From Magallana gigas (taxonomy: Eukaryota), in contig NC_088855.1 of NCBI RefSeq assembly GCF_963853765.1, positions 43,028,001 through 43,092,000 on the forward strand: a stretch of DNA of 64,000 bases, read 5' to 3'. The notes beneath the pieces were generated by a model. It saw only the letters and a program-made list of their open reading frames with translations, was not told where the DNA came from and made no database searches. Position 1 is the stretch's first letter. Every line of letters begins with the position of its first letter. Shown in pieces: positions 1 through 53,900 of the stretch. Made by a program: the position numbers and the translations under genes.

Positions 1-3000
1 GAGGGACGGGTCAGAATTATGACAGCCTTTCAGGACACGTAACCGTTGTCGGCAAATACACCAGAAAATGTCTCGGATTCGGTTTAGCATGCAGATCATG
101 TCGGAAGTGTACATACGCCAGATGGAATAAAACGCAAGTTAAAAATCATAACTGCAAGAGAAATTGGACAGGATCCGCGAAGGGAATGGAACCATTTTTA
201 ACGGTGAAATGTCTCAAGTCATTGAAAGAAAAAGGCTTTAATGTCAAAAAGCTAACCATGGATGATGACACAACCACATTCATCAGAGCTAAAAAAGCAA
301 TCTCCCCGGAGTTAACGAAATCTAGCGATAAAAATCATGTCGTCAAGAATCTTACTAGCAATTTATACAAACTTCGACAGGAAAACAAAAACTTGAGTGT
401 GAAGATTATTAACTATTTCAAGAAATGTTTTTCATACGCAGTTCAGCAAAATCGAGGTAGCCCAGCATCCCTGCAGAAAAATTTAGAGGCTATTGTTCCC
501 CATGCATTTGGAGAGCATGTCAAGTGTGATGTACACTGGTGTGGATTTTTGAAAGCCCCAAATTTGTACAAGCACAAGTCGCTACCGCACGGCAAAGACC
601 TACACGACGAGGGTCTGCGGAAGTCACTGTCTTGTGTATTCGCTAAATATGCCGCTAATGCCGACAAACTTGCTGATTTGGAGTCTTCAAATTCAAATGA
701 GAATCTCAACCAAATGATTGCAAAGAAGGCGCCAAAATCACAACACTATTCTGGGTCAGAGAGTTTAGCCTATCGCCTATCTGCATCTGTAGCACAGAAA
801 AATGAGGGACACAAGTATATGTTAGAGGTAAGTATCTAAATTAAAAAAAAAACACGTTTATTATTCGTAAATTAGGGGGGGGGGTGTCAGGGTGATGGGT
901 GACCGAATTACCTGTATATTTTTGTGTAAGAATGTTTTTTTATAATCTTGTTATACATAATTGTCTCTTCTAATTACGTAGGTCAACAAAACGTGCAATC
1001 TTTCACCTGGAAAACACACAGCAGAAAGGCTTCAAAAGTTGGACGTGAAGAGAAACATAAAGAGAGCCAAACAGGGCACTGTCCAGGCGAAGCGGGATAG
1101 GCTAAGGGCAAAGGAAAATCGGCATTCTGCACAAGCATTAGAGGAACTTAAGGAAGGAACAACGTACGAGTCGGGTGTTTTAATAAATAAAGAAGAGGCT
1201 CAGCTTGAAGAAGAGATACAAGAAATCCCTTTACCAGAAACCGACAAAAAACGGACTGTGGTCTCCCCTGCTCCGTCTTCTTCTAGTTCAATTATTGTTC
1301 TTGATCTAGAAACTACAGGATTTGGTAAGTGTTTACTATACATTTATATTATGAATTGATGAAAATATAGAATCTAAGTAATTATATGTTTCAAAGATGT
1401 AAGACATTTTGTGTATTTATTTTCAGCTACAGAAAGCAGTATTATACAAATTGCGGCAAGAGATTTAAAAACATCTGATCATTATGTGAGATTTATCATG
1501 CCAGAAAATGGTTTTGTCCCGTCTGCCGTATCAAAGCTGACTGGCATCGAAGTGCATGGACTGACCATGTATTATAACCTTGTTCCGGTAGAATTTACAT
1601 CATGCAAACGTGCAGTTGATGAATTCCTGGCATGGCTGAAAAAATACAAATCGCCGCTGCTTGTTGCGCACAATGCAAAGTTCGATGCGCGCATCCTAGT
1701 GTCCACCATGTGCAGACTTAAGATGGATGACCACCTTAAGGACATCGCTGGATTTAGTGATTCAATGCATCTTTTCAAAAAAGAATATCCAGGAAGAGGC
1801 TCCTACAAACTGGAAAGTCTATCAACCGACCTAATGGAGCAGCAGTTTGAAAACATGCATAATGCCGAAGTCGACGTCAACATATTGACAGCTCTATTGA
1901 AAAGAGTGTCAAACGTACATGAAAAACTGATAGACATATCATTTTCAACTGAAAGTGTTCTCGTTAACAATCAAAAACTGATCAACAAAAAAATGTATTT
2001 GTCAAGTTTCAGTGGTTTAATAAATGAACAGGTACTCTCTAAAACACAGTGCAGCAATCTAGCCGCGCAGGGAATTGGCGAATTCCACATATCTTTAGTT
2101 AGAAAACGGGCAGGAACGGAAGGGATAAAAAATATGCTGAGGGGGAAAATCACAAAACTTGACTCTGTTTGTGAAAAACTTTCCAAGTTCTACAGTTCAA
2201 ATAATGCACAATGAATCATGGTTAATGCCTGCATGTGATCTTACAAAAACAACGTGTTATACATGATTGTATAATTAGGGTCAAGTAAGCCTTCTCTTTT
2301 CTTGTCTTGTCAGACAAAATGATCTCTTTTGTGCTTTCAAATTATCCAAACACTCATTATTACCATTTTTTAAAAAATATTGTGTATTTTTAATTAGTTT
2401 AATGATTATAAGCTTTTTTATCTTTTGAAAAAAAATCACTTTTACTCAAATGTTATAAATGTATGAATGTGTACATGTACGAAATATCAGATAAAATGTG
2501 CTTATACTTCCACATTTTTTAAAATTTTTTTTTTTTGGGGTGGGGGTGGGGGGGGGGGGTGGGGGTGCTATATAGTGCTATATAATGTTAAAGAGAAATC
2601 CTAGACATTCATTCAATATAACTCTGAAAAAAAGTTGCAGTTTTAACAATTCTAAATTGATTTTCTTGTAAATCCTATAAGAAAATTTAATGAAAGAGAT
2701 TTGACGTTGTACTTACAAGCATGACGTCAAATACGGAAAAGCGACAATTTTCGGTAAATAATCGGAAATATAAAATTAAATAGCAAAAAATCTAGCGAGA
2801 ACACATATCAATTTTTTTACATAATTAATTTGTAAATCACCTTTACTTTACGTACAGAAAATGTTGTTAGATTCGTCTAAGTTGTTAAAAAGTTATTTAC
2901 AATATCTTTAAATAACTTCAATTCGAAAATGAAGAAAAAAATGCTCATTTTCCTATATATTTCATTAGAAAAGCGTCAAAACAGCACAAAAAAACAATAC

Positions 3001-9400: not shown

Positions 9401-12400
9401 GCAATGGTCATTCTTGCTTGCTCCTGCATTTTCAGTAGGGTAGAACATTCCTAGAGTCCTTTTTTATTCAGAGTGTATTCTTCAATGTTTACATATTTTT
9501 GTTTTATTTATTTGTTTGCAGTGCTTCTGATATTGTGTACCACTTCAAAGTCTGTCATTTAATTGCGGCATCACTGGAACGCACCACCGACCTCGAGGCT
9601 TGCCGAGCTCTCCTGGAGTTTCTTGTGACACTAGTGGATAAAAATGGGTAGGATTGACAGGAAAATAATATTATGTACATAAAGGTCTCTTTGATTGCTG
9701 TATCTGCACCAATATGCTTAAAAGTGTCTAGCTAACAGAGGATAGAAAGAGTTTATGCTTAAAAAAGATATACCGTATTTTTCCGACGATTAGTCGGTAT
9801 TTTTTTCTTTTAAGCAGAGCACCCGACTTATCGTCTTGATCGACTTGTCTAAGGCTTGAGGTCAGAAAATTGTTAAAAATATTATTAAAAATCTTGGTTT
9901 TAATCATCTTGAGTTGGCTGTGTGCTTGAAAATTATGTTGTTGAATTCATTGTTCATCTTTAATAATTATCATTTTCACCCATCTGTTAACACTAGAATA
10001 CATAATAATAACAGTTATTAAAAAATGCTGTCAAATGCTGTTTTGCACATCACGCGATATCTGGAATTGTTTACAATGCAGGCAACTTTGTAAATGTTGC
10101 CGGTATTTGAAAATATGATGCATAAAGTACAAAGTGTAATTGTTTAATTTTTAATCATTAATAATTTTTGGTAGCAATATTGGGGACATCATGGCATCAT
10201 TCACTGATAATGTTACTGCATTTTTATACGCCATTTTGAAGTGATAAGATAGACGTATCGTCTGAATCGACGTATCGTAGGATTTTGTTAAAATTTTTGC
10301 TAAAAATGAGCAATTCGACTAGTCGTCTGCATCGACATTCGTCGGGAAAATACAGTATGTACTTTGGAGAAGAGAAACTGTAATATAATGGTACATTTAA
10401 TTAATGACTCTAATAGAAGATGTCATCTAAACTTTTATAGGTCAAATTGGCCAAACTCTTAGGACAATAAAACAGTTGCTTTAAAATTCACTTACCACTC
10501 ATTTTAACACCACAAGTCTTTAAAATCTGTGCAGTAAAGTAGTACATGTACATGTAATGGCAAATCTTGTCTGATACTGAAACATTCATATTCTACCTGT
10601 AAATGAATATAAATATATGTTTCAATTCTTAAAGCTGAACACCGCTCGTAAATAGGCACTGTCCGCCATATTTCTCTTTAATCACTGCTGTCCTTACAAC
10701 CCTTATATAAGGGACAGACCTCTAAACAGTTCAAAATACTTTGCTGTAGAAGTCTCACCTGTGTGGACGTACATTTTGTCTCGCCGTGTTACTCGGTCGC
10801 GATGAAATTATCAAATGTTACGGACCTTTTTGGAGCCAGGAGAATACTAACATCAAATAAATTGGTCAATGCATTATTTACGAACAGAAAATGAAGATAA
10901 GAAAAAAATGCATAAAATCTAAAGACCACAAAAGGAATACTACATGTCGGCCACGAGGTTCAGGTGTGCAATCGGGTGTAACGAAATCGAAGGGTTTATA
11001 TACCAGGTATCTGTGTGACGGTGCCTATTTACGAGCGGTGTTCAGCTTTAACATGTAAAATATTTTACTTCACAATTAGGATGTGATGTGATACAGAAAA
11101 TGTTTTCAATGCTTAACTGATTATGATGGAGGAACAATCTTTTTAGTGACATAGGAAATGATATCTATGAAATTGTGAACATTATTGTATTTGAAAATTA
11201 TGTTTATTAAACGGTCTTGAGTTAGATTAAATGACCCTTCAGATTGTTTATTAAAGATGCATGTATGTTAACACTTCAGTATACCCAGAACACATTTTTT
11301 TCTTCCTAAAGAAAACAAGAACCACTTCACAATGAAAAACTTGCCAAAGTTGTTGTTTCCAAGATGGATTCGTTCTTCAAAGATGATGTGGTGAGTTCAC
11401 AGTGTACTCTAATATGACCATAGTTACAAAATAACTCAAGAGAAATCTTTTTCTGGAACAAAATTTATTTGGCACGTTGTGTTGTATAAATCACAGTGTT
11501 TAAAGTTTTATATTTCTAATCACTATATTAACATGGTGGATCATTGAGTAAAGGTCTTTAGATTTTTGCTTTCATAGTAAGTTCTATGTCCCATGGATTT
11601 TTTGTTCAGAAAGTTAAGCACAATTTTACATTAGCACAGCCTTATGCATTTTCAAGCAAGTGTCAAACAACTCCATATCACAGTTAATGGCCTGTAATGC
11701 TTGGGTTCCTGCGATTATTCACTGACTTCTGTACATCTGACAGAAGTTCTCAGTCTCTGGTTGGGCCATTCTATCAATGACCAGTCTTCTGGTAGGGGAC
11801 TCTGGGAGAACGGTCACTCCCTCCCCAGGGGAAGTCTGGAGGATCAGGTTAGACAACTCCAGAACCCTGGACCAGACCTTCCTCCTGTAACACTTGACCA
11901 TGTACTGGTATCCCTCAATCACTGAGAGTCGCAGTAGGTATTGGCGCTGAAATTCATTCTGCCCAGTCACTGAGGCCTGGAACAATCTCTGGTCAAGTTC
12001 CTTTTGAATGCTTTCTGAATTAAACAGAAAAAGGTTGCCATATGAATTATATGTCCTCAACCAGAATAACCTACAGGTCACTAATAAAAGTCATGCAACC
12101 TATTTCAACTAGAAGTTATATCCACTTCATTTTACCAGCGTTTACATGCAAAATATGATAATAAAAGTTAAAAGTATTGGTTCTGATAGCTTCAGTTTTC
12201 ATACAAGGGAATTGGTTGACAATTCATCAAATAATTTTTTGGAAAAACTTATCCTTTTTGTGTAACACACATTCCAAATTTACAAGTCTTGATTTAAAAA
12301 AAAATTCATCTAATTCTTAAATATGCTTTGTCCTTGCCTTTGATTCAGGACAGTTTGCTTCAATTATAAAACTTCCTTACAAAATCTTTATACTCTCAAA

Positions 12401-13990
12401 GAGAGATATGTTGATATCGAATTATACAGACTTTTCAACAGGTTTTGCTTTATACAAATAGTTCTTTAAGAAAGCCACAAAGTTCCTTATATTATTTACA
12501 AAGATCTAATTAATTTTCCCTGACTTTTAAGCCTACCATGAAATTAAGTTCTGTATTCTTTCAAAAATACATGTATTAGACGTTTCCTACCTAAATGTTG
12601 AATTCTGCTGATTGCCTCATCATGGATACACAGCAAGGCCTTCAGTTGTTTGGCATTCTCCATTGTGTCCATGTGTGTGTGGGAGAGTTCCAGTTTGTCT
12701 GAGGGTAGGGTAGTGTGTTCACCTCAGGGTTGGGACCAAGACTGAGCCATCCTGAAGTGTGTTCCATTATAAGTAGTCCTGAACCCGGCTTCACTCACTT
12801 CCAAGCACTGCTTAAGAGTTAAAATACTGCACTGATAGAGATCTAATCCAAGGGACTTAATTTAAATTCAGGGTAAAGGGGGAGTAATAAATGGAGTTAT
12901 TTATTCCATGTGAAGGACCCATGTGAAGATATGACAAAAGAAGAAATCAGAATTGTTTTTGGGATTTGTATAAAAGCACTCAAAATAAATAGCAATTTTG
13001 ATAGGCTTTGTATAGGGGCTATTTACCTCCTGAAGTTAATTACTGCAATTATCACCACATTGAGTTTCTTAGAATAGGGGTCATTTGTGTGGGATTTACA
13101 GGTAAGATGTTTGTTCACCTGTTGAGTGCTGTAATCACACAGTCGGGGATCAACAGGTAAACAAAGGGCCAGGTTAACAGGTGAAGCAACATCCATTGTC
13201 TTGGGGGAGTGCTAGGCTTTGTTTTGAGCGTGGAGACAACTGTGTATTGTTTGTCTGCCCCATTTCCAGCTCTGTTCAATTAGGGCTGTTGCAGGTATTC
13301 AAGGGGCTCTGAAAGTGCAATAAATTAATTTTCACACTATGGTTAGAAATAAAAATTAAGAATATTCAGACCAAATGACAGTAATTGAATTTCTTGACAT
13401 CTGACTATTATTTTTAAGCTGCATGTATTTGATTTCTGAAATAATTGAATTTATTTATATTGATTTCAATTAAATATTTGATGTAATGAAAGTTCTAGTA
13501 ACCTTAAAAGTATGAAATTATACTGGCATGCAACCATGCATGTTCTAGCTGAGTACCATTTTCACCTATGCAGTTTAAAACACATAAAATTATATACAAG
13601 AAATGATGTAACAATGCACTGGCGAGAAGTAGTCGCAAACCAGTATCATAATTATATTAAAAAAAAGTTGAACTAGCTTAGGATATAGAGTTGAGGTTGA
13701 TTGGGATACTTACTGGTGAAGATCATGGAAGGTGGTTTTTCCAGGGCACTAATTTACTTACATTTAACCAGTTCTCCCTAACCTAACATATTTAGGAGTG
13801 TTAATTGAAATTTTTTTTATACCACTGCATCAAATTGTGGTGTTTTTCTTACTTAATTGGTGGACTTTTTTTTAGTGCATTGCAAGTGGAGTGCGATACT
13901 GTGAAAATTTATGCAAGGAGAACCGAAAGAAGAAGACATTCCTGCTGGAACAAGGAGTTGTGGTTATTCTGAAAAGGTAGGTTATGGTTC

Positions 13991-14021
<31 letters not shown>

Positions 14022-17000
14022 TCAACACCTCCATCCTGCAGGAAAAAAAACCAAAATAGAAAAAAAAACCAAGAAGTTTTATTTTTTTTTAAATGTATGC
14101 ATATCATTTTATTTTACTTGATGCAATAATTCAAGGTTTATTTTTAATCCTCAAAGGACATTGTATCAAACTTAAGGATTTATTGCAACGATTTTTAAAT
14201 GTCAAAAAAGTTATTTAATTAATCCAATAATTGACAAACAAGGTCATGATTTACACCAAAGTCTTGAAGCACATATACATAAAAAACTGTATTTGTATGG
14301 TTTTATTGTTGGATGATTGAAAATGAACATGACATTTTGTGTGTTAGGGCCATTAAGCAAGAGAGGTTGAGTGTGGAGACGTGCAGGAGATGTGAGTGGC
14401 TGATGAACCACCTGGTGGTGCAGGTCCCCATCTCCCGGGCCCTCAACAACCAGCCCATCCACCCACGCAGGTCAGGGGCCCCGCACCAAAGGTAGGTCAC
14501 CACCACTAGACTGGGAGGGGGATTATTGGTGAAGTCACTATCACTAGACTGGGAGGGGGTGATAGTGAAACCTGTACCTGCCTACAAAATCAAACATTGT
14601 AATATCATCGATATCAGTGCATGGTAACACATGCATACAGGAAAGGGTTTTCATTATAGAAGAAGTAGTTTTCATTATTTGTGAATTATGGTTGATGAGA
14701 AACACTGATAAAAAGAAAGGGTCTTCATTTTATAAAATGGGTTTAAAAAGGTCTTGTATTCTTTTTCTTGTTCAACTCATTTGACAAAGATAGATGTTTG
14801 TTGACCATTTCATAGGTTGGTTCCAAACATAAATTGGATCCAGAACAAACGCAATGTCATCCTGGAGATTCAAGTGCCGCGAGCAAGAGACGCTCCTGTA
14901 AAACTCACTCCTAACAGTTTCATGTTCAGGTAAGGAAGATATGAAGATGTCAATTGATTTTACAGCTATTACAAAAATATTGAATGTCTTATTTATAATG
15001 ATTTCTTACTGCATTTCTTTGAATTTTTTTGTATATGTTTTATAGAACTGTTGTGGAAGATACTTTATACGAGGCAATGTATGAACTATATAGTAAAATT
15101 GTCCCAAGTGGTTGTTATGTGTCGGTTAATCGGTCAGAGGTTCAAGTCAAGTTGAAGAAAGAGGAGCCAGGGACTTGGCCACGCCTCCTCAAAGAGAAGA
15201 CAAAGGTACGTGTACATGTACTGACATTCTGTTTATTATATGAACCAATGTATGCATTTTTGAATCAGAATGTCATTTAATTAAGAAATGAAATTTTACA
15301 TGGCCTGCATTGGTCACAAGTTTCAGTATATAGGAAATGTCAAAGCATATATATACCCCCACTCCGAAGGATACTGTTTTACCCTTGTGTGTCTGTCTGT
15401 CCTTCTGTCTGTCTGTCCGTCCGTAACAAAAATTTCTGTCATATTTTTCTCAGCAACTGTTTATTGCAGATGCTTGAAATTTTAAAACACTATTTGTTTA
15501 GGCATGCCATATTGTGGTATATATTTTTGTACCAATTGGATGTCAACTTCATATGAAATGACTACTTTATTTATTTTTAGCCTAAATTTATAAACAAATT
15601 TCCGTGGAAGATTTCTCAGCATTTTTAGCCTAAATTTTCAAACAAATTTCCATAGAAGATTTCTCAGCAACTATTTATTGCAGATGCTTGAAATTTTAAC
15701 ACACTATTTGTTAAGGCATGCCATATTGTGGGATATATTTTTGTACCAAATCGGATGCCAACTTACTGTTAAATGTCGAATTTGCTTATTTTGATATTCA
15801 CATCGGAGCAGGGGTATCACTAGTGAGCATCGGCTCACAGATATCTTGTTTTTTTTAGGCCAAATGATCTTAATGTATCAATGACATCCAAATAAGTTTT
15901 GTTTGAGAAAGAGCAGATTATCTATCACCCAATCATTTAAATTTTTATATGTATATAAATATTACTGTATTTAGGCGAGAGAAATTTAATTTTTAGTTTT
16001 ACGGATTTTGTTGTAAAATATTTGGGTCGGAGGAGGAAAAAAAAAAAAATGGGCAACCTTTTATTAATCAAAATTACATATTATTTGCTTGAACTTATAA
16101 TATTAAGTTTAATTTGTCCACTATCCACTGTGTACTTTGTGTTTGTTTCAAGATCATTGATATCAACCTTACTAAACTTGTTCAGGATAACATTTTCTTT
16201 GCTTTTCATAAAAACTTTTAAGCCAAACCATGCATGGCTGATCTCCATCTTAAATACTCAATGTTATAGAGACGCTTACACTTGATTTTAAAAGCTCCCT
16301 TTGTCAAACGTTTTGCAGATTTCAAATAAAATAAAGTAATTTTAAAACCAAGATCAGTCAAACTTGAAAATTCCGGAAACATTTCCGAAGATACGAATTT
16401 TTTTTCATTATTTTTTTTTTTTACAAAATCGAAAAAATTGGGTCGGCGGATCCGTAAAACTAAAAATTAAATTTCTCTCGCCTTAATTGTAGTTGAGTAG
16501 TACATGCATTTTACATATATACATGTAGTCAGTATATTTTCACACAATTTCAGTTTCTTATCGTTGCACTTAATTCATTTGGATGTTTTTCTGTTGTTTT
16601 AGTTTCCCAATATCAGAATAAACTATGACAAGTTTGCTGGCAGCTCATCAGAGGAAGATGTCTCAGATGAAGACAATCCATTTGTTCTAAAGAAAAGTAA
16701 GGGCAGACAGCAGTGTAACGTTAAATAAGAAGAATAAAGAAACATAATTTATTTTCACCTTGATATAACCTTTGCTTTTTTCATGACCACTTTCACATCA
16801 CAAAAATACAATATGCAAACTTTATATCTAGCATTATTTGCCAGTAGAATCTTTTTAAATAGCAAAAATGACTGACACCTATAAAGAAAGTCAGACATTT
16901 ACCCCATTTTCTCAAATTTTGTAACAATAGTTTTTGTTAATATATTAGTATTTTATAACCTTTGGAAACTTGGTTCAACTTGGTTAAATCACATTTTCAC

Positions 17001-17708: not shown

Positions 17709-18538
17709 CCTTTTTGTCTGTCGGTTGTCGTTCATCTGTCGCAAACTTATGAGTATTTTAGGTTATTCTCATAAAATACGAGGCCAGTCTTAACCAACAA
17801 AAATTGAAAAATTAATGATTCTTAACATCATGGCCATAAATAATTGGAAGAACTGGGAAAATTGATTCAGATTTTTGAAATTCTCTTCTTTATTTCTTGG
17901 CATATAGCAGACTAAATAAGATGTTGAGTTAGTAAAAATCTGTACAAATCATGGCCCAAGGGGCAGGGGTTTGGTGGGGCCACAATGCGGGGTCAAATTT
18001 TTGCCTAGGAATATATTGAGAAAATCTTTAAAAATCTTCTCAAAAACCATTTGCCCAAAAAGCTTAAACTTGGTTGTAAGCATTATCAGGTAGTGTAGAT
18101 TCAAGTTTGTTCAAATCATGATGGGGCCACATATGGGGGGGGGGGGGTGTTAAATTTTTGACATAGAGAAAAATCTTCTGGAAAAGCATTCAGTCCATAA
18201 AGCAGAAACATGTGTGAAAGCACAGGTTTTGCAGATTAAAGTTTTATAAAATCATGATTCCCTAGAGAAAAGTGGGGCCACAAAGTGGGGGGGGGGGGTG
18301 ATTTTTATATAGGAATAGAGAAAAACTTTCTTACAAATGCTAAAACAACAAAAGGGGCTGGGTATTTACCATAAAAGTATGTAGATAAAAATCGGCAGAA
18401 TTTTTTTGAAACTTTTTGAGCCAGATCTACTGTACTTAGTTGTCAAGATATTTTGATTTTGATACTGTTATGTTGATTTAATCAGAGTTATGGCTATTGT
18501 TGCTCAGGTGAGTGATGTGTCTCCCGGGCCTCTTGTTT
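17669..18538 (+). mobile_element. Helentron/Pearl-type element with degenerate internal tandem repeats
   Basis: 5' ACCTGAGTCACTCAGGTGAC hairpin plus a short microsatellite, repeated 'aaatcatg...ggggccac...ggggg' units, and a 3' end GCTCAGGTGAGTGATGTGTCTCCCGGGCCTCTTGTTT. A second 3'-end fragment lies at about 18870-18908. Confidence 0.8.
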
Positions 18539-32490: not shown

Positions 32491-33687
32491 TCAATCCCCC
32501 TCCTCTACCCCCACAACCCATGGCTCTGCCTGAGCCTGCCACTTCAAAATGTAAGTCTTATCTTCCTTCATTTTGGGCCTCAGAGCCAGAATTTCATCCA
32601 CAACATCCTTCTTCAACACACAGTATACACAGAGTGTATGGAGCTGGGCGCAGCGCCTGGCCAGATTGACCAGCGCTCTCTCCAGCTCCGGAGAATTCCT
32701 CGTCTGTAAGACAACCACCTCCAGTGTGTTCTTATAAAATGACGTGGCTTGTGTGACCTCCTCATAAATCATGGTGAAGGTCTGTAGGTTCAGGACATGG
32801 ACCGGGATTTCTGGCTTCATTATTTGGGAGACTCTGTGAAGGGGACAGGTATGATCAAAAGACAGCATCACTTTTAGATCTGGCAACTTGGTTACCAGCT
32901 GCTGCCAAGCTTCTGATGACAAATCAGTGCCATACTTCTCTTCTCTCCTACAAGATATGCCAAGTTCCTCCAAAGGGGCTCTATCATCTTCGGCGAGAGC
33001 CACTAATGTGTTGTCAGACATGCTACTGTGAAACACAAAGAGCTTTTTCAATTTTCTGCATTTCTTCACCAGTTGGAAAATGCAGTTAGCTGACACTTTG
33101 CACACCAATACTTTATTAAGAAGATTTAAACTCTCCAACAATGGATGGTTCTGTGATAAAAGGTTTAACATCTCATCATCAAAGGCAACTGGCATTCCAC
33201 TCAAATCTACATTTACTAGAGAATGCATAGGTGTTTCAAGTGCTTCAGGGTTGCGTCCAAATAACAGCTTCAATGATTGCACAAACTCAGCACCAGCATA
33301 AAAGAGAGGATTTTCACCAGTAAAGTCAATTTTAATGGAAGACAGTTTCCTGTTGGTAAGATTGGCAATTCCATTTAAAATATCACGAGCTATGGTTCTG
33401 CAAATTTGTTCGCTCTGATTTACTTTCATTAAAACATGTTTCAAATGGGCACCATGCATCTCCAAGCACTTCTGATGACGAATGGCTTCTTTCTCATCAT
33501 TGCTTTGAACAATAAAGACAAAATCCCTCCAGAGAACTGGAAAGTGGAAGCAATCATTCCAAGTTTTGCACACAAATGAAGCACGGAACTTGTCTTGGAG
33601 ACTCAGATAGGAGAAGATCTGCACTACGATGTGGTCAGGCAGAGAGTTCCATGATAGGTCGTCTCCTTCTGGCTCGGGATCCGCCAT
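32491..33687 (-). CDS. FBXL8: F-box/LRR-repeat protein, FBXL8-like (intronless CDS, 398 aa)
   Basis: N-terminal F-box WNSLPDHIVVQIFSYLSLQDKFRASFVCKTWNDCFHFPVLWR followed by LRRs. The ATG is at 33687, just downstream of a splice acceptor. Subfamily assignment is from memory of the family (FBXL3/8/21 group). Confidence 0.8.
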   Translation of the reverse strand: MADPEPEGDDLSWNSLPDHIVVQIFSYLSLQDKFRASFVCKTWNDCFHFPVLWRDFVFIVQSNDEKEAIRHQKCLEMHGAHLKHVLMKVNQSEQICRTIARDILNGIANLTNRKLSSIKIDFTGENPLFYAGAEFVQSLKLLFGRNPEALETPMHSLVNVDLSGMPVAFDDEMLNLLSQNHPLLESLNLLNKVLVCKVSANCIFQLVKKCRKLKKLFVFHSSMSDNTLVALAEDDRAPLEELGISCRREEKYGTDLSSEAWQQLVTKLPDLKVMLSFDHTCPLHRVSQIMKPEIPVHVLNLQTFTMIYEEVTQATSFYKNTLEVVVLQTRNSPELERALVNLARRCAQLHTLCVYCVLKKDVVDEILALRPKMKEDKTYILKWQAQAEPWVVGVEEGD

Positions 33688-34645
33688 CACTATCTATACT
33701 TTTGGTAGGACACTGAAACATAATAAATACCGGTATATTGCTTTTATTTATTTTTGAAAAATATTACAAATTATATTAATTCAACTCATATCAAATATAC
33801 ATAGCAAGTTTATATCCTCTATATATATTCAACATAGGGTACAACTTATTTTAACACAGGATATAATTCTACAATCTTATTCCTTTTAATATCGATAAAA
33901 ATAAAAAAGTTAACCTTAAATTAAGCAAATTCCTTAGGTTTCAATAACAAATTATCTTAGTCAATTCTTTAATGTTTTCAGAATACTTGCAATTACAAAT
34001 TATGTCAAAGCACACAAAATTTCTGTGCTAGCGCCTAAAATATAATATCTATTAGGCTTTCTAATTTAAGTAAGTCACAAACAAATTCTTCAACGCTGAA
34101 ATGTTTAATCAAATAGCACTAGTGAATCAGCTGATCAGCGCAATGTATGACTAATACGGAACACATGAGTCACTAAATGGGTAAAAACGGGTTTGAGTTA
34201 AAATTTATTTAATGGATTTGTATACAACATCCGTATAGAAAAAAATGCTTCAGAGTTTTGATGGTATTCTTCTTAATTTTTTTGTAAGATTAGTTGGAAT
34301 CATGAACCCAGAACCAAACCAATGTACATACATTTACCTACAACAGTGTACAAAACTAAATAATAATGAGTAAATTGGTAATTACCGTTATTACGGATAA
34401 ATTCTCTTATTCTGCATACATTCATGACAGATAAGCGTTGCACCTTAAAGTTTCACATTATAATTTACAGAATCTAAAATCTTAGCACCAATCTGAAAAT
34501 ATAAGTTTAAGTATATATATGGTTTGGACAAATGTCACTGTCAGCCAGGTTGTATACAAGCACTCTCTACTATTAGAAGATAGAAAAACGGCGTCGTACT
34601 TTCATTTTCACTTTGACGTTCAGATTAATCCCGAAGTTTGTGGCA

Positions 34646-43975: not shown

Positions 43976-44076
43976 GTATAAATGGCAATATATTGAGATT
44001 GTATCCTTAAAACAGCCATTGCATTCAACACCTCACCATGTTTAGGCTACCATGTTCAGGCATATCATGCTGTTAA

Positions 44077-44501
44077 AGCTGAACACCGCTGGTAAATAGG
44101 CACCGTCAACTCACACAGGAACCTAGTATATAAACCCCTCGATTTCGTTACACCCGATTGCACACCTGAAACTCAAGGCCGACGTTTAGTATTCCTTTCG
44201 TGGTCTTTAGATTTTGTGCATTTATTTTCTTATTTTATGTGCATATTCTGTTGTAAATAATGCATTGACCAATTGATTTGATGTTAGTATTCTCCTGGCT
44301 TGAAAAAAGTGCGTAAAATTTGATAATTTCATCGCGACCGAGTAACACGGAGAGGCAAAATGTACGTCCACGCAGGTGAGACCTCTACACCAAAGTACTC
44401 TGAACTGTTTAGAGGTCTTAGCCTTATATAGGGGTTGTAGGGACAACAGTAATGAAAGAGAATTATAGCGGACAGTGCCTATTTATGAGCGTTGATCAGC
44501 T
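44077..44501. mobile_element. Second copy of the AGCTGAACACC Kolobok-type MITE, inverted relative to 10633-11047
   Basis: TTAA|AGCTGAACACCGCTGGTAAATAGGCAC ... GTGCCTATTTATGAGCGTTGATCAGCT|TTCA. The interior is the reverse complement of the 10633 copy. Confidence 0.88.
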
Positions 44502-45229
44502 TTCACTAATTGAGTTCATGATGTCTGATCTGGATCTTTCCAGTAACACGCTTTACTTTTGATGCAGATTCGTGGGTTATCTATTTGTCATATTAGGTGC
44601 ATGGCGTGAATTTTTTAAAAACATTATACATGTATTTACATCCAGCAAGTATCATTTCCTCTATTTCTTACGGAAATTGATTGTAAATGTAATTCATAGC
44701 TGTGTAAAAATTGACAGGACTGAAATTTACAGGCCCCGTTTATCGATTGGTCGAAACCTACAGCATCACGGACTGCACGAAATAATCATGATGATTTTAA
44801 CCTCAAATTCCCAAAGGAAACGATTTGGCTGTTTCTTGTATTAACGGTAATATAGTTATTTTTTTTTACGTTTTCCAACCAATTGATTGATTTGTTAATG
44901 AAAAGTGTAAATATGAATAATATGATTCATGCGGGTATGAAGGTAGCAATCATTGCATAAAAAACTCGGGTTATGCATTTTTCTGAAATGTCGCCACATA
45001 CAAATCCCGCATGAATAACCAAAGAAAGCATTTTACTGTTTAAGTAATTGCAAAGTAAAAAAAAACCCATTATAGTCCATATCGAAGCGTACATGCCTTA
45101 TGCCTTATTGCTTCAATGCTTTTTATAGATTAGTCCGTTTCTCACCTTGAGAGTTCCATAAATAATCTAAGTTTGCATTCATTTGAGATTTAAACTATTT
45201 TTCTTCATATAATTACATTTTTTAAAGTT

Positions 45230-50900: not shown

Positions 50901-53900
50901 CCTACACGGACGTACTCCAGCTTACCTGTATGTTTGTCGGTCTGGTGAGTGTGTTTTTGTGTGGGCGTTAGCCATCCTTTGATATATACATTGGATCAGT
51001 GTATATATCAATCATTTAAAATTCTAATTAAAACCACATCACTCTCCCTGTTCAGTAAACGAAATATTTAAACAAAGAGTCTTTCTTTTAATGATTCATG
51101 TGGGTATGAAGGCAGCGAGCATTGTAGAAAAAACATAACCCGCAGTAGAGGGTTATGTAATCTTCAAAGTTCGCACGAATTATAAAAGAAAGTTAAATGG
51201 ATTATTGAGTTAATAAAAAAGAGAAATTAAAAGCAACTAAATTATTACGCCAGATAGAAGAAATGGCCAATGCTTCAGTCTGACGTCAATTCGTGCAGTG
51301 CACGATTGTGTTAGGTAACTGAGGGTTTCAAATCAATTGATGGATAGAACTTCTGGTTTCAGCCCAGTTAGTTTCTATGAATATCAATTGCTATGGTATT
51401 TTTTTTTTACGAAAAGTATACCTCTACGGGGTAGAGTTACCTCGCTTGGGTCACACTATGTTCTTCCTGAAAACTCGTCTTGGTTTTCCCTCAGTGGTTG
51501 AGTATTCCATTCGCCATGACAAACGAGCATGTGACCAGCATCACAACCAATTCCTCCACGGTCTGGATCAAGGAACTGGAGCCCAAGTACGTGGGTTACT
51601 ACATGGACTCGTTCATGCTGCTGATACTGGGCGGGATTCCGTGGCAGGCCTACTTCCAGAGAGTCCTGTCCGCTAACTCCGCCTTCAACGCCAAGATGCT
51701 GTCCATCACCGCCGGGCTAGGGTGTGTCATTATGTCCGTACCGTCGGTCTTGATCGGGGCCGTCGCTGCTAACACAGGTGGGTGGGGTTACGGTGGTATT
51801 TTTTATACATGAGGACTGCATCATTCTCTTATGAATGAAGTATCTGTCAAAATAAAGTTCAGCGCAACGCATTTTGTAAGGGGTTTAATTTCTTTTTTCA
51901 ACCATTTTCTCTAAAGTAAGGGGAAATAATACTTTTTTGTTGAAAAATTGATATTACTGCTTCAAATAGACATAATTTGCTATAAACTTTACAAAAGGGT
52001 TGGAACATTATCCAAGCCACCCCTCTTTTAAATTAAAACATTTCCCTAGCTTGTGTGTACACGTTTGTATGTAAATTTAAGAAAAGTGAACAATGACAAT
52101 TAAAACGAACGTACTGTCAGCTAAAACCTGCATAGTATCATTGTGCTCGTTAGTCAGTTTGTGATTGATGGTTGTAAATGGGTATTACATTCCAGTCATA
52201 TAATATTTAATCAAACCCCCGTAGGATGATTTATGAATGACAAGCCTCGGGTATTTTCTGAGAATCTAGTTATAAAATGTCACATTATACATTTTGCGAC
52301 GTGCTTCTCGTATCAATCTTATCAATACAGTATAATGATCTTATTTGATGTCACGGCATAATAAACTTCTAGCATTTAACATATAGCAAGTTCTTGTTAT
52401 AAGTTGTGAACATAGGCGTTGGAACCACCGGGGGGGGGGGGGGGGGCTAAGCCCCCCTTCCACTTTTTTTGCAAAGTTGTACATAACTATAAACAAAAAC
52501 CTTTATTTTTTTGCCTGTCAAGATTTTTGACAAGTTTCCCACCCCCCAACTTTCAATTTGCTTCCGACTTCACTGTTGAAAATTTCTTTGTCTGTGATAT
52601 ATGCTATATTACAACCAATATTCATATCCTTGTATCTATATGTAGTTTTTAACACTAATTCAGATTGGAACGCAACAACGTATGCAACAGTGGACAAGAA
52701 GCCCGTCCCCATTCCTAGCGACCAGGCGTCCAACATCCTCCCCCTGGTCATGCAGTACCTGACACCCACCTGGGTCTCCTTCATCGGCCTGGGGGCCGTG
52801 GCTGCGGCCGTAATGTCGTCCACGGATTCCTCCATTCTCTCAGCGAGCTCCATGTTTGCCAGAAATATCTACAAGATGATATTCCGTCCCAAAGTAGGTT
52901 TTGAATACATGCGCGGATCAAGAATTATTTTTTTTTGGAGGGGGGGGGGGGGGCTGTTTCCAAGAGATAATTGTGTTTTCTGGGAAGGGGGATGGGTCCA
53001 AAGACTATTTTCATTAAATTTACTATGTGAATTTGATAAGTTTGAATTTTCCGGGGGGGGGGGGGGGCGGAACCTCCAATTAATCTTTTAATCCGCGTGG
53101 GGCATGAAAATGTTATCCTTACGTAAGTTGGTAAAACAGTATGTTAGCAAGCAGGCGATGAGTCGGTGTAAAGGCGAAAAGTCATCCCCTGTTGCAATTT
53201 TAATTGACTTATGAAATTGACATATAAAGTTAAAGAACGTTTATTAATGATGATCATGCTTGATTCATTCGTAAAGTAGGAAGAATTTCTCTCCCTCGAC
53301 AGAAATAATTGACATAATCAAACGTTTCAATGACATCCATCCTGGAAGTTAAATAGTTTTCTTAATCAAGTTAAATGGCACGTTTTTGCATCAAAAAAGG
53401 ATCATCTTAATCAAATATTCTCTTATCATTCATCATAATGTATTATCAAATGTATTATCAAGTTGGAAGATAAAGATCTCACAAGAAAAAAAATGATCGC
53501 ATGTTTTTTTTTAAAGGGGTTTTAACATTATTTATAATTTCTTTCTCCTGTAAATTTTCTTGTAGGCCTCTGAGAGGGAAATAATGTGGGCGATGAGAAT
53601 CTCCATCTTCTTTATCGGCGCCCTGGCAACTTTCATTGCGATTGTTGTTGAATCAGTCTACGTGCTGTGGTTCCTATGCTCAGATTTGTTGTACGTCATC
53701 AGCTTTCCACAACTTTTATGTGTTGTCTACCTTAGGGACACCAACACTTACGGATCGGTTGTCGGTTTTGTTGTCGGTGTAGTTCTCCGATTAACCGGTG
53801 GTGAATATACTCTGCATATCACGCCCGTTATCAAATATCCATGGTACTCCGAGTCAGAGGGATTACAATTATTTCCGTATAAAACCTTCGCTATGTTGGT

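What the first reader, a model, noticed from the sequence alone, without database searches (positions are those of the whole stretch)
11464..12771. Complete nested antisense orphan gene with its own TATA, Inr, intron and poly(A) signal
Seen: inside the intron between host exons 11390 and 13876 is a compact unit on -: TATAAT (12771), TCAGTC Inr (A at 12743), ATG (12672), one phase-1 GT-AG intron, a 125-aa ORF and AATAAA (11469). The ORF track shows only exon 2. The protein looks like a helical coiled-coil (LKALLCIHDEAISRIQHLESIQKELDQRLFQAS...YLLRLSVIEGYQYM). I recognise no named domain. Inference: a lineage-specific small gene, possibly of mobile or viral (Polinton-like) origin, that is independently transcribed.
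Basis: partly seen in the sequence, partly recalled or inferred. Interest (0 to 1): 0.7.

Follow-up and report, generated by a model that had tools for sequence, protein, structure and literature searches.

The report
Annotated oyster gene nested in intron
This is a real, spliced, selectively constrained small protein gene lying backwards inside an intron of a Pacific oyster piRNA-pathway helicase gene; it is already annotated, belongs to an old mollusc-wide family of unknown function, and shows no sign of viral or mobile origin.

Summary
The window is Magallana (Crassostrea) gigas DNA. Spliced cDNA contigs from a congener show the 12591|12014 junction. The same intron position and phase occur in C. 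virginica, Saccostrea, Pinctada and the limpet Lottia. The poly(A) block around AATAAA is invariant across three oyster genera. dN/dS is about 0.05.

The gene is not an oyster orphan. A profile search finds about 130-aa relatives in oysters, pearl oysters, mussels, scallops, Dreissena and patellogastropods, and oysters carry a second paralogue lineage.

The host is a TDRD12-like Tudor-helicase gene, and the nesting in the same intron is shared by Crassostrea and Saccostrea.

Nothing supports a Polinton, viral or mobile origin: no fold or family hits, no terminal repeats, no element genes nearby, and an ancient intron.

The cDNA contigs start about 330 nt further upstream, inside the best-conserved non-coding block of the locus.

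The predicted fold is a long helical hairpin plus a conserved C-terminal helix. Molecular function is unknown. This is an ordinary nested gene, of low to moderate interest.

The parts
12965..13268 (-). Strongly conserved non-coding block upstream of the coding region. It is probably the true core promoter plus the start of the 5' UTR.
   Evidence: It is the best-scoring conserved block of the whole locus against C. virginica (78.5% over 312 nt) and Saccostrea (77.5% over 267 nt), scoring above the host exons. Indels of 1-2 nt argue against coding. The cDNA contigs L001 and L002 begin inside it. It is unique to this locus among all loci held.
12673..13081 (-). 5' untranslated region as documented by the congener cDNA contigs (409 nt, colinear with the genome, five upstream ATGs).
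   Evidence: L001 1-487 aligns to 13081-12591 and L002 1-476 aligns to 13070-12591. It is 94.8% identical to the congener, as high as the CDS at 94.2%. The upstream ATGs sit at matching positions in both species.
12740..12771 (-). They are a possible proximal alternative promoter, or simply part of the 5' UTR.
   Evidence: Both motifs are present. They lie in a partly conserved stretch, where the TATA-like hexamer and the Inr-like hexamer each differ in the other genera. No ATG lies between 12743 and the start codon. However, both lie inside the transcribed region of the cDNA contigs.
12591..12672 (-). Coding exon 1 (82 nt, 27 codons plus 1 nt).
   Evidence: The exon boundary falls at the homologous residue in five other loci.
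12015..12590 (-). Phase-1 GT-AG intron (576 nt).
   Evidence: It is removed in the cDNA contigs L001 and L002. Position and phase are conserved as far as Lottia.
11719..12014 (-). Coding exon 2 including the TGA stop (11721-11719).
   Evidence: It is conserved with C. virginica and Saccostrea at the DNA level.
11453..11718 (-). 3' UTR with the poly(A) signal AATAAA at 11469-11464. Its end lies about 60 nt from the host exon's donor site.
   Evidence: The GTGCCAAATAAA block is invariant in 5 sequences from 3 genera, while the rest of the UTR diverges. cDNA contig L002 ends at 11453.
11391..13875 (+). Host intron (2485 nt) of the TDRD12-like gene that contains the whole unit. The flanking host exons are 11312-11390 and 13876-13976.
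   Evidence: Splice sites were read directly. The host product is 2082 aa with the domain order TUDOR-DEAD-Helicase_C-TUDOR-CS. The same two flanking exons bracket the orthologue in C. virginica and Saccostrea.

Best explanation
The unit is a genuine, independently transcribed protein-coding gene of the Pacific oyster (RefSeq LOC105336032, 125 aa). It has two coding exons and lies antisense within one intron of a TDRD12-like Tudor/DEAD-box helicase gene. It is the oyster representative of an old, mollusc-restricted family of about 130-aa intracellular proteins. The gene structure, a single phase-1 intron after about residue 27, predates the bivalve-gastropod split. The nesting in this particular intron arose no later than the common ancestor of Crassostrea and Saccostrea. 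These points are shown: splicing, polyadenylation signal, purifying selection, family distribution and conserved synteny. These points are inferred: the protein is a soluble three-helix module, made of two helices of about 40 residues forming an antiparallel hairpin, a variable disordered linker, and a short conserved C-terminal helix carrying the [FY]-[CS]-x3-R motif. It most likely acts as a small protein-protein interaction or scaffold subunit, with the C-terminal helix docking on the hairpin or on a partner. It is not a viral or transposon-derived gene.
For: The joined protein is identical to RefSeq P0001, with a CDS span of 954 nt. The spliced cDNA contigs L001 and L002 show the 12591|12014 junction. 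dN/dS is 0.05 against the congener (18 synonymous vs 4 non-synonymous changes, p=2e-9). Uncorrected pN/pS is 0.25-0.41 against other genera, where synonymous sites are saturated, and the C-terminal 18 residues are the most constrained. The intron position and phase are the same in C. virginica, Saccostrea (orthologue and paralogue), Pinctada and Lottia. The poly(A) block is invariant in three genera. An HMM search of 1.8 billion representatives gave 20 hits at E<=0.001; the named ones are all molluscs apart from one false positive, and the rest are unnamed assembly contigs. The host domain order is TUDOR-DEAD-Helicase_C-TUDOR-CS, and the same flanking exons occur in C. virginica and Saccostrea. 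AlphaFold2 with 25 sequences gave mean pLDDT 86 and pTM 0.68, with helices at 3-44, 47-88 and 111-124. An in-frame one-codon insertion variant in the linker (P0005, 50 member sequences) is consistent with coding constraint.
Against: No transcript from C. gigas itself was available here; the cDNA contigs come from a congener 90-94% identical at DNA level. Logan contigs are unstranded assemblies, so their outer ends (13081 and 11361) could include host pre-mRNA reads. The function is inferred from a predicted fold only. All fold matches are generic helical hairpins with E>=0.13, and no family or structure match exists.
Confidence: 0.9

Rival explanations
1. The gene was brought in by a mobile or virus-like element, or is a recent retrocopy, and persists as a passenger in the intron.
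For: Family members sit antisense in introns of three unrelated large genes: TDRD12-like, NVL-like and a Sec7 GEF in Mytilus. The Mytilus copy is intronless, so at least one copy probably moved by retroposition. A Mutator-like transposase ORF lies about 10 kb away in the window.
Against: No inverted or direct repeats bracket the unit. No polymerase B, integrase, capsid, protease or packaging ATPase ORF is in the 64-kb window. No viral fold hit has E below 0.1, and there are no Pfam hits. The phase-1 intron is shared with a gastropod. The position in the same host intron is stable across oyster genera, and purifying selection is strong.
Confidence: 0.03
2. The transcript acts mainly as an antisense regulatory RNA of the host TDRD12-like gene, by transcriptional interference or pairing with the neighbouring host exon, and the ORF is secondary.
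For: The arrangement has been kept across Ostreidae. The poly(A) site is only about 60 nt from the host exon, and one cDNA contig (L001) runs on to 11361, 30 nt into the host exon in antisense. The leader is long, rich in upstream ATGs and as conserved as the CDS.
Against: dN/dS of 0.05 and conservation of the protein across molluscs outside this host gene show that the protein itself is the selected product. Relatives in Lottia and Pinctada are not in this host. The read-through end of L001 may be an assembly join in an unstranded contig.
Confidence: 0.05
3. One reading: TATA at 12771, start at 12743, 71-nt leader. The longer cDNA contigs are a minor isoform or contain host intron reads.
For: The TATA-to-Inr spacing of 28 nt is canonical. 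The stretch around both motifs is partly conserved without indels. All five upstream ATGs lie upstream of 12743, so this start would give a clean leader.
Against: Two independent cDNA contigs are colinear from 13081 and 13070. Both motifs differ in the other genera. Such motif pairs occur 4 times in the window. The far better conserved block lies at 12965-13268.
Confidence: 0.3

Closest known systems
RefSeq LOC105336032 (XP_011438505.1, 'uncharacterized protein', Magallana/Crassostrea gigas), with its orthologues LOC128188221 (C. angulata), LOC111136316 (C. virginica) and LOC133172286 (Saccostrea echinata)
   Same: It is the same gene. The protein is 100% identical (P0001) with the same CDS span. 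The orthologues are 98%, 66% and 55% identical and sit in the same host intron.
   Different: Nothing differs in the coding model. The database entries carry no function, family or name, and no paper in the searched library mentions them.
Classical antisense nested intronic genes, from my own knowledge and not tested here: OMG/EVI2A/EVI2B in a human NF1 intron, F8A in F8 intron 22, and the pupal cuticle protein gene in the Drosophila Gart intron
   Same: A small complete gene with its own transcription signals lies on the opposite strand inside an intron of a larger, unrelated gene, and the arrangement is kept among related species.
   Different: The organism and proteins differ. Here the nested gene has an intron of its own, and its 3' end abuts a host exon (about 60 nt).
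Antiparallel helical-hairpin modules (ESCRT-III/CdvB/PspA alpha1-alpha2 hairpin, prefoldin beta, LSD1 tower, Rad50 coiled coil)
   Same: Two helices of about 40 residues form an antiparallel hairpin. TM-scores normalised to the query reach 0.5-0.67.
   Different: No match is significant (best E is 0.2). Sequence identity is 7-20%. There are no Snf7, PspA or prefoldin Pfam hits. The protein is much shorter than ESCRT-III and has a family-specific C-terminal motif. This is shape resemblance only.

Membership tests
Polinton/Maverick-like or other virus-like element gene | Neighbouring element genes (protein-primed polymerase B, retroviral-type integrase, double and single jelly-roll capsid proteins, maturation protease, packaging ATPase) | tested here: not met
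   The ORFs of at least 130 aa in the 64-kb window include a Mutator-like transposase, an RNase_T/PML_C ORF, an F-box protein and an SSF symporter exon, plus ORFs without Pfam hits. None is an element gene. The gene calls around the locus are VWD, TDRD12-like and Mutator/RNase_T.
Polinton/Maverick-like or other virus-like element gene | Terminal inverted repeats or target-site duplications bracketing the unit | tested here: not met
   The only strong inverted repeat in 10300-14200 is a separate MITE-like element at 10617-11063. Nothing brackets 11450-13270.
Polinton/Maverick-like or other virus-like element gene | Sequence or fold similarity of the protein to viral proteins | tested here: not met
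   The best BFVD Foldseek E-value is 0.13 and all matches are generic helices. Pfam gave no hit above chance.
Processed retrogene | Intronless copy of a spliced parent gene | tested here: not met
   The window gene keeps the ancestral phase-1 intron. The Mytilus galloprovincialis member P0010 is intronless and may be a retrocopy.
Nested antisense intronic protein-coding gene | Whole transcription unit inside one intron of a host gene, on the opposite strand | tested here: met
   The host intron is 11391-13875. The unit runs from 13081 (13268 with the conserved block) to about 11453. The host is on the + strand.
Nested antisense intronic protein-coding gene | Own splicing and 3'-end formation, with a product under selection | tested here: met
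   Spliced cDNA, invariant poly(A) block and dN/dS of 0.05.
Orphan / species- or genus-restricted gene | No detectable homologue outside a narrow lineage | tested here: not met
   Homologues occur in Saccostrea, Ostrea, Pinctada, Mytilus, Pecten, Dreissena, Lottia and Patella. No credible hit lies outside Mollusca: the single fly hit is a GYR/YLP repeat protein.
ESCRT-III / PspA / Vipp1 superfamily | Snf7/PspA profile match and a five-helix core beyond the alpha1-alpha2 hairpin | tested here: not met
   There is no Pfam match. Foldseek E is at least 0.2 and covers the hairpin only. The protein has 125 aa and three predicted helices.
Host gene as TDRD12-like | Domain order Tudor - DEAD-box helicase - Tudor - CS | tested here: met
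   Precomputed Pfam hits on the 2082-aa product are TUDOR, DEAD, Helicase_C, TUDOR and CS (weak). The C. virginica and Saccostrea hosts give the same order without CS. Orthology to vertebrate TDRD12 was not tested by phylogeny.

The most novel reading that the evidence does not exclude
This is an undescribed, ancient mollusc-specific family of three-helix proteins. Both of its paralogue lineages in oysters have been locked antisense inside introns of large genes since before the oyster genera diverged: a TDRD12-like piRNA-pathway helicase gene and an NVL-like AAA ATPase gene. This would point to a functional coupling between nested gene and host, such as shared germline or proliferative expression, or transcriptional interference through the very conserved upstream block and the 3' end that abuts a host exon, and not to mere passive residence in long introns.
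Probability: 0.12. Interest if true: 0.5.

Novelty: already known. Interest (0 to 1): 0.25.

Why it matters
The direct value is as a check. A reader working from raw sequence alone recovered an exact two-exon gene model, and that model is confirmed. The viral/orphan reading and the promoter assignment that made the finding look exciting do not hold up. A secondary value is that the gene turns out to belong to a phylum-restricted protein family with no Pfam entry and no literature. It has a confident predicted fold, a sharply conserved C-terminal motif, and unusually stable nested positions in two host genes. That gives mollusc biologists a defined family to name and an easily testable question about co-expression with a piRNA-pathway gene. 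It opens no long-standing question.

Tried and rejected
- **Pfam.** I scanned the two exon products and 16 family members. Only scattered chance hits came back (DUF3404, Mod_r, Terminase_2 and others, one or two members each).
- **PDB sequence search.** Profiles A2 and A3 matched only a de novo designed helix protein (E 0.22) and the XRCC4 coiled coil (E 1).
- **Rfam.** On 11000-14200 there was only a sub-threshold plant MIR319 match at 13358-13438 (23 bits against a gathering score of 54), which I rejected.
- **RNA structure in the upstream block.** A hairpin at 13110-13165 has z of -3 to -4 in Crassostrea but is not kept in Saccostrea. There is one compensatory pair in 55 and a positive covariation term. 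I rejected it as evidence for a structured RNA; conserved DNA motifs are more likely.
- **Coding potential of the upstream block.** Rejected because of 1-2-nt indels between species.
- **Is the upstream block a dispersed repeat?** nhmmer against all held loci and the window found only the orthologous sites.
- **Fly protein P0012 (1154 aa, 8 matched stretches).** It is a GYR/YLP repeat protein and a false positive.
- **Host exons near distant family members.** tblastn found none in the Pinctada, Lottia or Mytilus loci or the Saccostrea paralogue locus.
- **Literature.** Searches by gene identifiers and by the run accessions of the cDNA contigs gave no papers. A search for TDRD12, oyster and piRNA gave nothing relevant.
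- **Not possible here.** I could not look up the RefSeq mRNA ends or C. gigas's own RNA-seq. A second iteration of the exhaustive profile search was blocked by the cap. The species behind SRR25455072 and SRR25455092 could not be identified.
- **Exon joining.** Inside scripts I joined the two predicted exons only to test the splice model.
Full report
**Origin of the window and check of the observation**

The exon-2 translation (window 11722-12012, minus strand) finds a 125-aa protein that is 100% identical: "uncharacterized protein LOC105336032" of Magallana (Crassostrea) gigas. That protein's gene lies on chromosome record OY970747.1. A 20,954-nt stretch of that record around it is identical to window 1719-22672.

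- TATAAT at 12771-12766, and TCAGTC with its A at 12743.
- ATG at 12672, and 82 coding nt up to 12591, followed by GT.
- A pyrimidine-rich stretch and AG before 12014.
- An open frame to the TGA at 11721-11719, and AATAAA at 11469-11464.

The host exon ends at 11390 (followed by GTGAGT), and the next host exon starts at 13876 (preceded by AG). Joining the two predicted exons gives exactly the RefSeq protein. The annotated CDS span of 954 nt equals 12672-11719. The coding model is therefore right, and it is already in the public annotation.

**Is it expressed and spliced?**

Two assembled contigs from public sequencing runs carry the uninterrupted 125-aa ORF: L001 (1141 nt, SRR25455072) and L002 (1041 nt, SRR25455092). 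Against the window each contig splits into two blocks that meet at 12591|12014.

The contigs are 90-94% identical to the window, with dS of 0.27, so they come from a congener and not from C. gigas itself. L002 ends at 11453, eleven bases past the AATAAA. L001 runs on to 11361.

Aligning the 3' regions of C. gigas, C. virginica, Saccostrea echinata and the two cDNAs shows an invariant GTGCCAAATAAA block in an otherwise diverged UTR. The poly(A) signal is therefore functional and conserved.

**Selection**

- Against the congener, the CDS has 18 synonymous and 4 non-synonymous differences. dN/dS is 0.05, with p=2e-9 against neutrality.
- Against C. virginica and Saccostrea, synonymous sites are saturated (pS about 0.7). 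Even so, uncorrected pN/pS is only 0.25 and 0.41.
- The last 18 residues are the most constrained part.
- A variant with a one-codon insertion in the linker (P0005) keeps the frame.

The protein, not merely the transcript, is under purifying selection.

**Not an orphan**

A profile of the oyster orthologues was searched against 1.8 billion representative proteins. It gave 20 hits at E<=0.001. By their source names these include:
- Saccostrea, Pinctada (two genes), Mytilus, Pecten (two genes) and Dreissena;
- the patellogastropods Lottia and Patella.

The one non-mollusc hit, from a fly, is a GYR/YLP repeat protein and a false positive.

Oysters have a second paralogue lineage, about 30% identical to the window protein. 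It is present in Saccostrea, Ostrea edulis and C. angulata.

The single phase-1 intron sits at the homologous residue in five other loci: C. virginica, Saccostrea (orthologue and paralogue), Pinctada and Lottia. It therefore predates the bivalve-gastropod split. The Mytilus galloprovincialis member P0010 is intronless and is probably a retrocopy.

**Context**

The host gene on the plus strand encodes a 2082-aa protein with the domain order Tudor, DEAD, Helicase_C, Tudor, CS. From established knowledge, this is the architecture of the piRNA-pathway factor TDRD12. Orthology was not tested by phylogeny.

The orthologues in C. virginica and Saccostrea lie antisense in the same kind of host. They sit between the same two host exons. 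No such exons flank the family members of Pinctada, Lottia or Mytilus within 10 kb. The nesting is therefore at least as old as the Crassostrea-Saccostrea ancestor, but it is not a property of the family as a whole.

The second paralogue lineage is also nested. Two tandem copies lie antisense in an NVL-like AAA ATPase gene in Saccostrea, C. angulata and Ostrea. In genomes with long introns this need not mean anything, but I record it.

**Viral or mobile origin**

Nothing supports it:
- No inverted or direct repeats bracket the unit. The only strong inverted repeat nearby is a separate MITE-like element at 10617-11063, in the preceding host intron.
- The larger ORFs of the window are a Mutator-like transposase and exonuclease gene near 186-2214, an F-box protein, a symporter exon and unassigned ORFs. 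None is a polymerase B, integrase or capsid gene.
- Foldseek against predicted viral structures gives no match below E 0.1.
- The ancient intron and the stable synteny argue directly against a recent acquisition.

**Promoter**

This is the weak part of the finding.
- Both cDNA contigs are colinear with the genome from 13081 and 13070. That is about 330 nt upstream of the proposed initiator.
- They begin inside window 12965-13268, which is the best-conserved block of the entire locus between genera. It reaches 78.5% over 312 nt against C. virginica and scores above every host exon.
- The block has small indels that are not multiples of three, so it is non-coding. It is unique to this locus among everything held.
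- It has no Rfam match. It contains three ACAGGT[AG] motifs and a hairpin that is strong in Crassostrea but not kept in Saccostrea, with no covariation support.

I read this block as the core promoter plus the start of the leader.

They lie in a moderately conserved stretch, though both hexamers differ in the other genera. All five upstream ATGs of the long leader lie 5' of 12743, so a proximal start would give a clean 71-nt leader.

Against them, motif pairs of this kind occur four times in the window. I give the distal start about 0.7 and a proximal start used as well or instead about 0.3. Only 5'-end mapping can settle this.

One caveat applies. These contigs are unstranded assemblies, so their outer ends could in principle include host pre-mRNA reads.

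**The protein**

There is no signal peptide or hydrophobic segment in the sequence. AlphaFold2 gave these results:
- With 5 sequences: a two-helix hairpin (3-44 and 47-86, pLDDT about 88) and a low-confidence tail.
- With 25 family members: mean pLDDT 86 and pTM 0.68. A third helix at 111-124 reaches a pLDDT of about 80, after a low-confidence linker.

That third helix carries the family's most conserved motif: an acidic residue, then [FY]-[CS]-x3-R two residues from the C-terminus. D108 and R123 are invariant in 25 sequences. A Dreissena member keeps both ends but has a linker of about 300 residues.

Structure searches return only generic antiparallel hairpins: archaeal and eukaryotic ESCRT-III, PspA, prefoldin beta, the LSD1 tower and Rad50. 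None is significant. There is no Pfam or PDB sequence match.

My best guess is a small soluble interaction module whose C-terminal helix docks on the hairpin or on a partner. This is inference from a predicted fold, with low confidence.

**Verdict**

"Independent gene" holds. "Orphan" and "viral/mobile" do not.
- The gene is already annotated, and it is an ordinary example of a nested antisense gene.
- What is not in the literature I could search is the family itself and its two conserved nesting sites. That is a modest lead and not a surprise.

Noticed in passing
window 10617-11063 (second copy at 44071-44513): A MITE-like element of about 450 nt with 47-nt terminal inverted repeats lies in the preceding host intron. 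A copy 87.6% identical lies 33 kb away. Another C. gigas-like contig (L005, 98.5% identical) lacks window 10633-11047, so the insertion appears polymorphic.
   Followed up: partly
window 12965-13268, minus strand: This non-coding block is conserved more strongly than any host exon between Crassostrea and Saccostrea. It has three ACAGGT[AG] (E-box-like) motifs and a 16-21-bp hairpin at 13110-13165 in Crassostrea only. It could equally be an intronic regulatory element of the host gene.
   Followed up: partly
window 186-839 and 1411-2214, plus strand: Two ORFs lie here, one with the C-terminal part of a Mutator-like transposase domain and one with RNase_T exonuclease plus a PML C-terminal domain. 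They are annotated as one 859-aa gene lying at or within the 5' part of the TDRD12-like host, on the same strand. It is possibly a domesticated transposase-exonuclease fusion.
   Followed up: no
L010 3953-4555 and 10001-10604; L011 3439-4102 and 10001-10381; L012 10001-10746 and 15017-15585: The second paralogue lineage of the family occurs as two tandem copies antisense inside an NVL-like (Nucleolin_bd plus 2x AAA) gene in Saccostrea echinata, Crassostrea angulata and Ostrea edulis. This is a second conserved nesting site for the same family.
   Followed up: partly
L006 10001-10399: The Mytilus galloprovincialis family member is intronless and lies antisense inside a Sec7-domain GEF gene. It is probably a retrocopy, and M. 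trossulus has a separate 127-aa member.
   Followed up: no
window 12673-13081, minus strand: Five upstream ATGs lie in the long leader, at positions that match in the congener cDNA. The last one (12750, in AAGATGGCT) has a start codon and context kept in all three genera but opens only 2-8 codons. It is possibly a conserved upstream ORF.
   Followed up: partly
window about 17936-18331: Tandem repeats of about 150-165 nt lie just downstream of the host gene's last exon. They are also present in several copies inside the Saccostrea locus (L008 13849-14442).
   Followed up: no
window 32491-33690 (minus strand) and 52558-53091 (plus strand): A single-exon 399-aa ORF carries an N-terminal F-box, and there is an exon of a sodium:solute symporter family gene. 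Both are ordinary neighbours.
   Followed up: no
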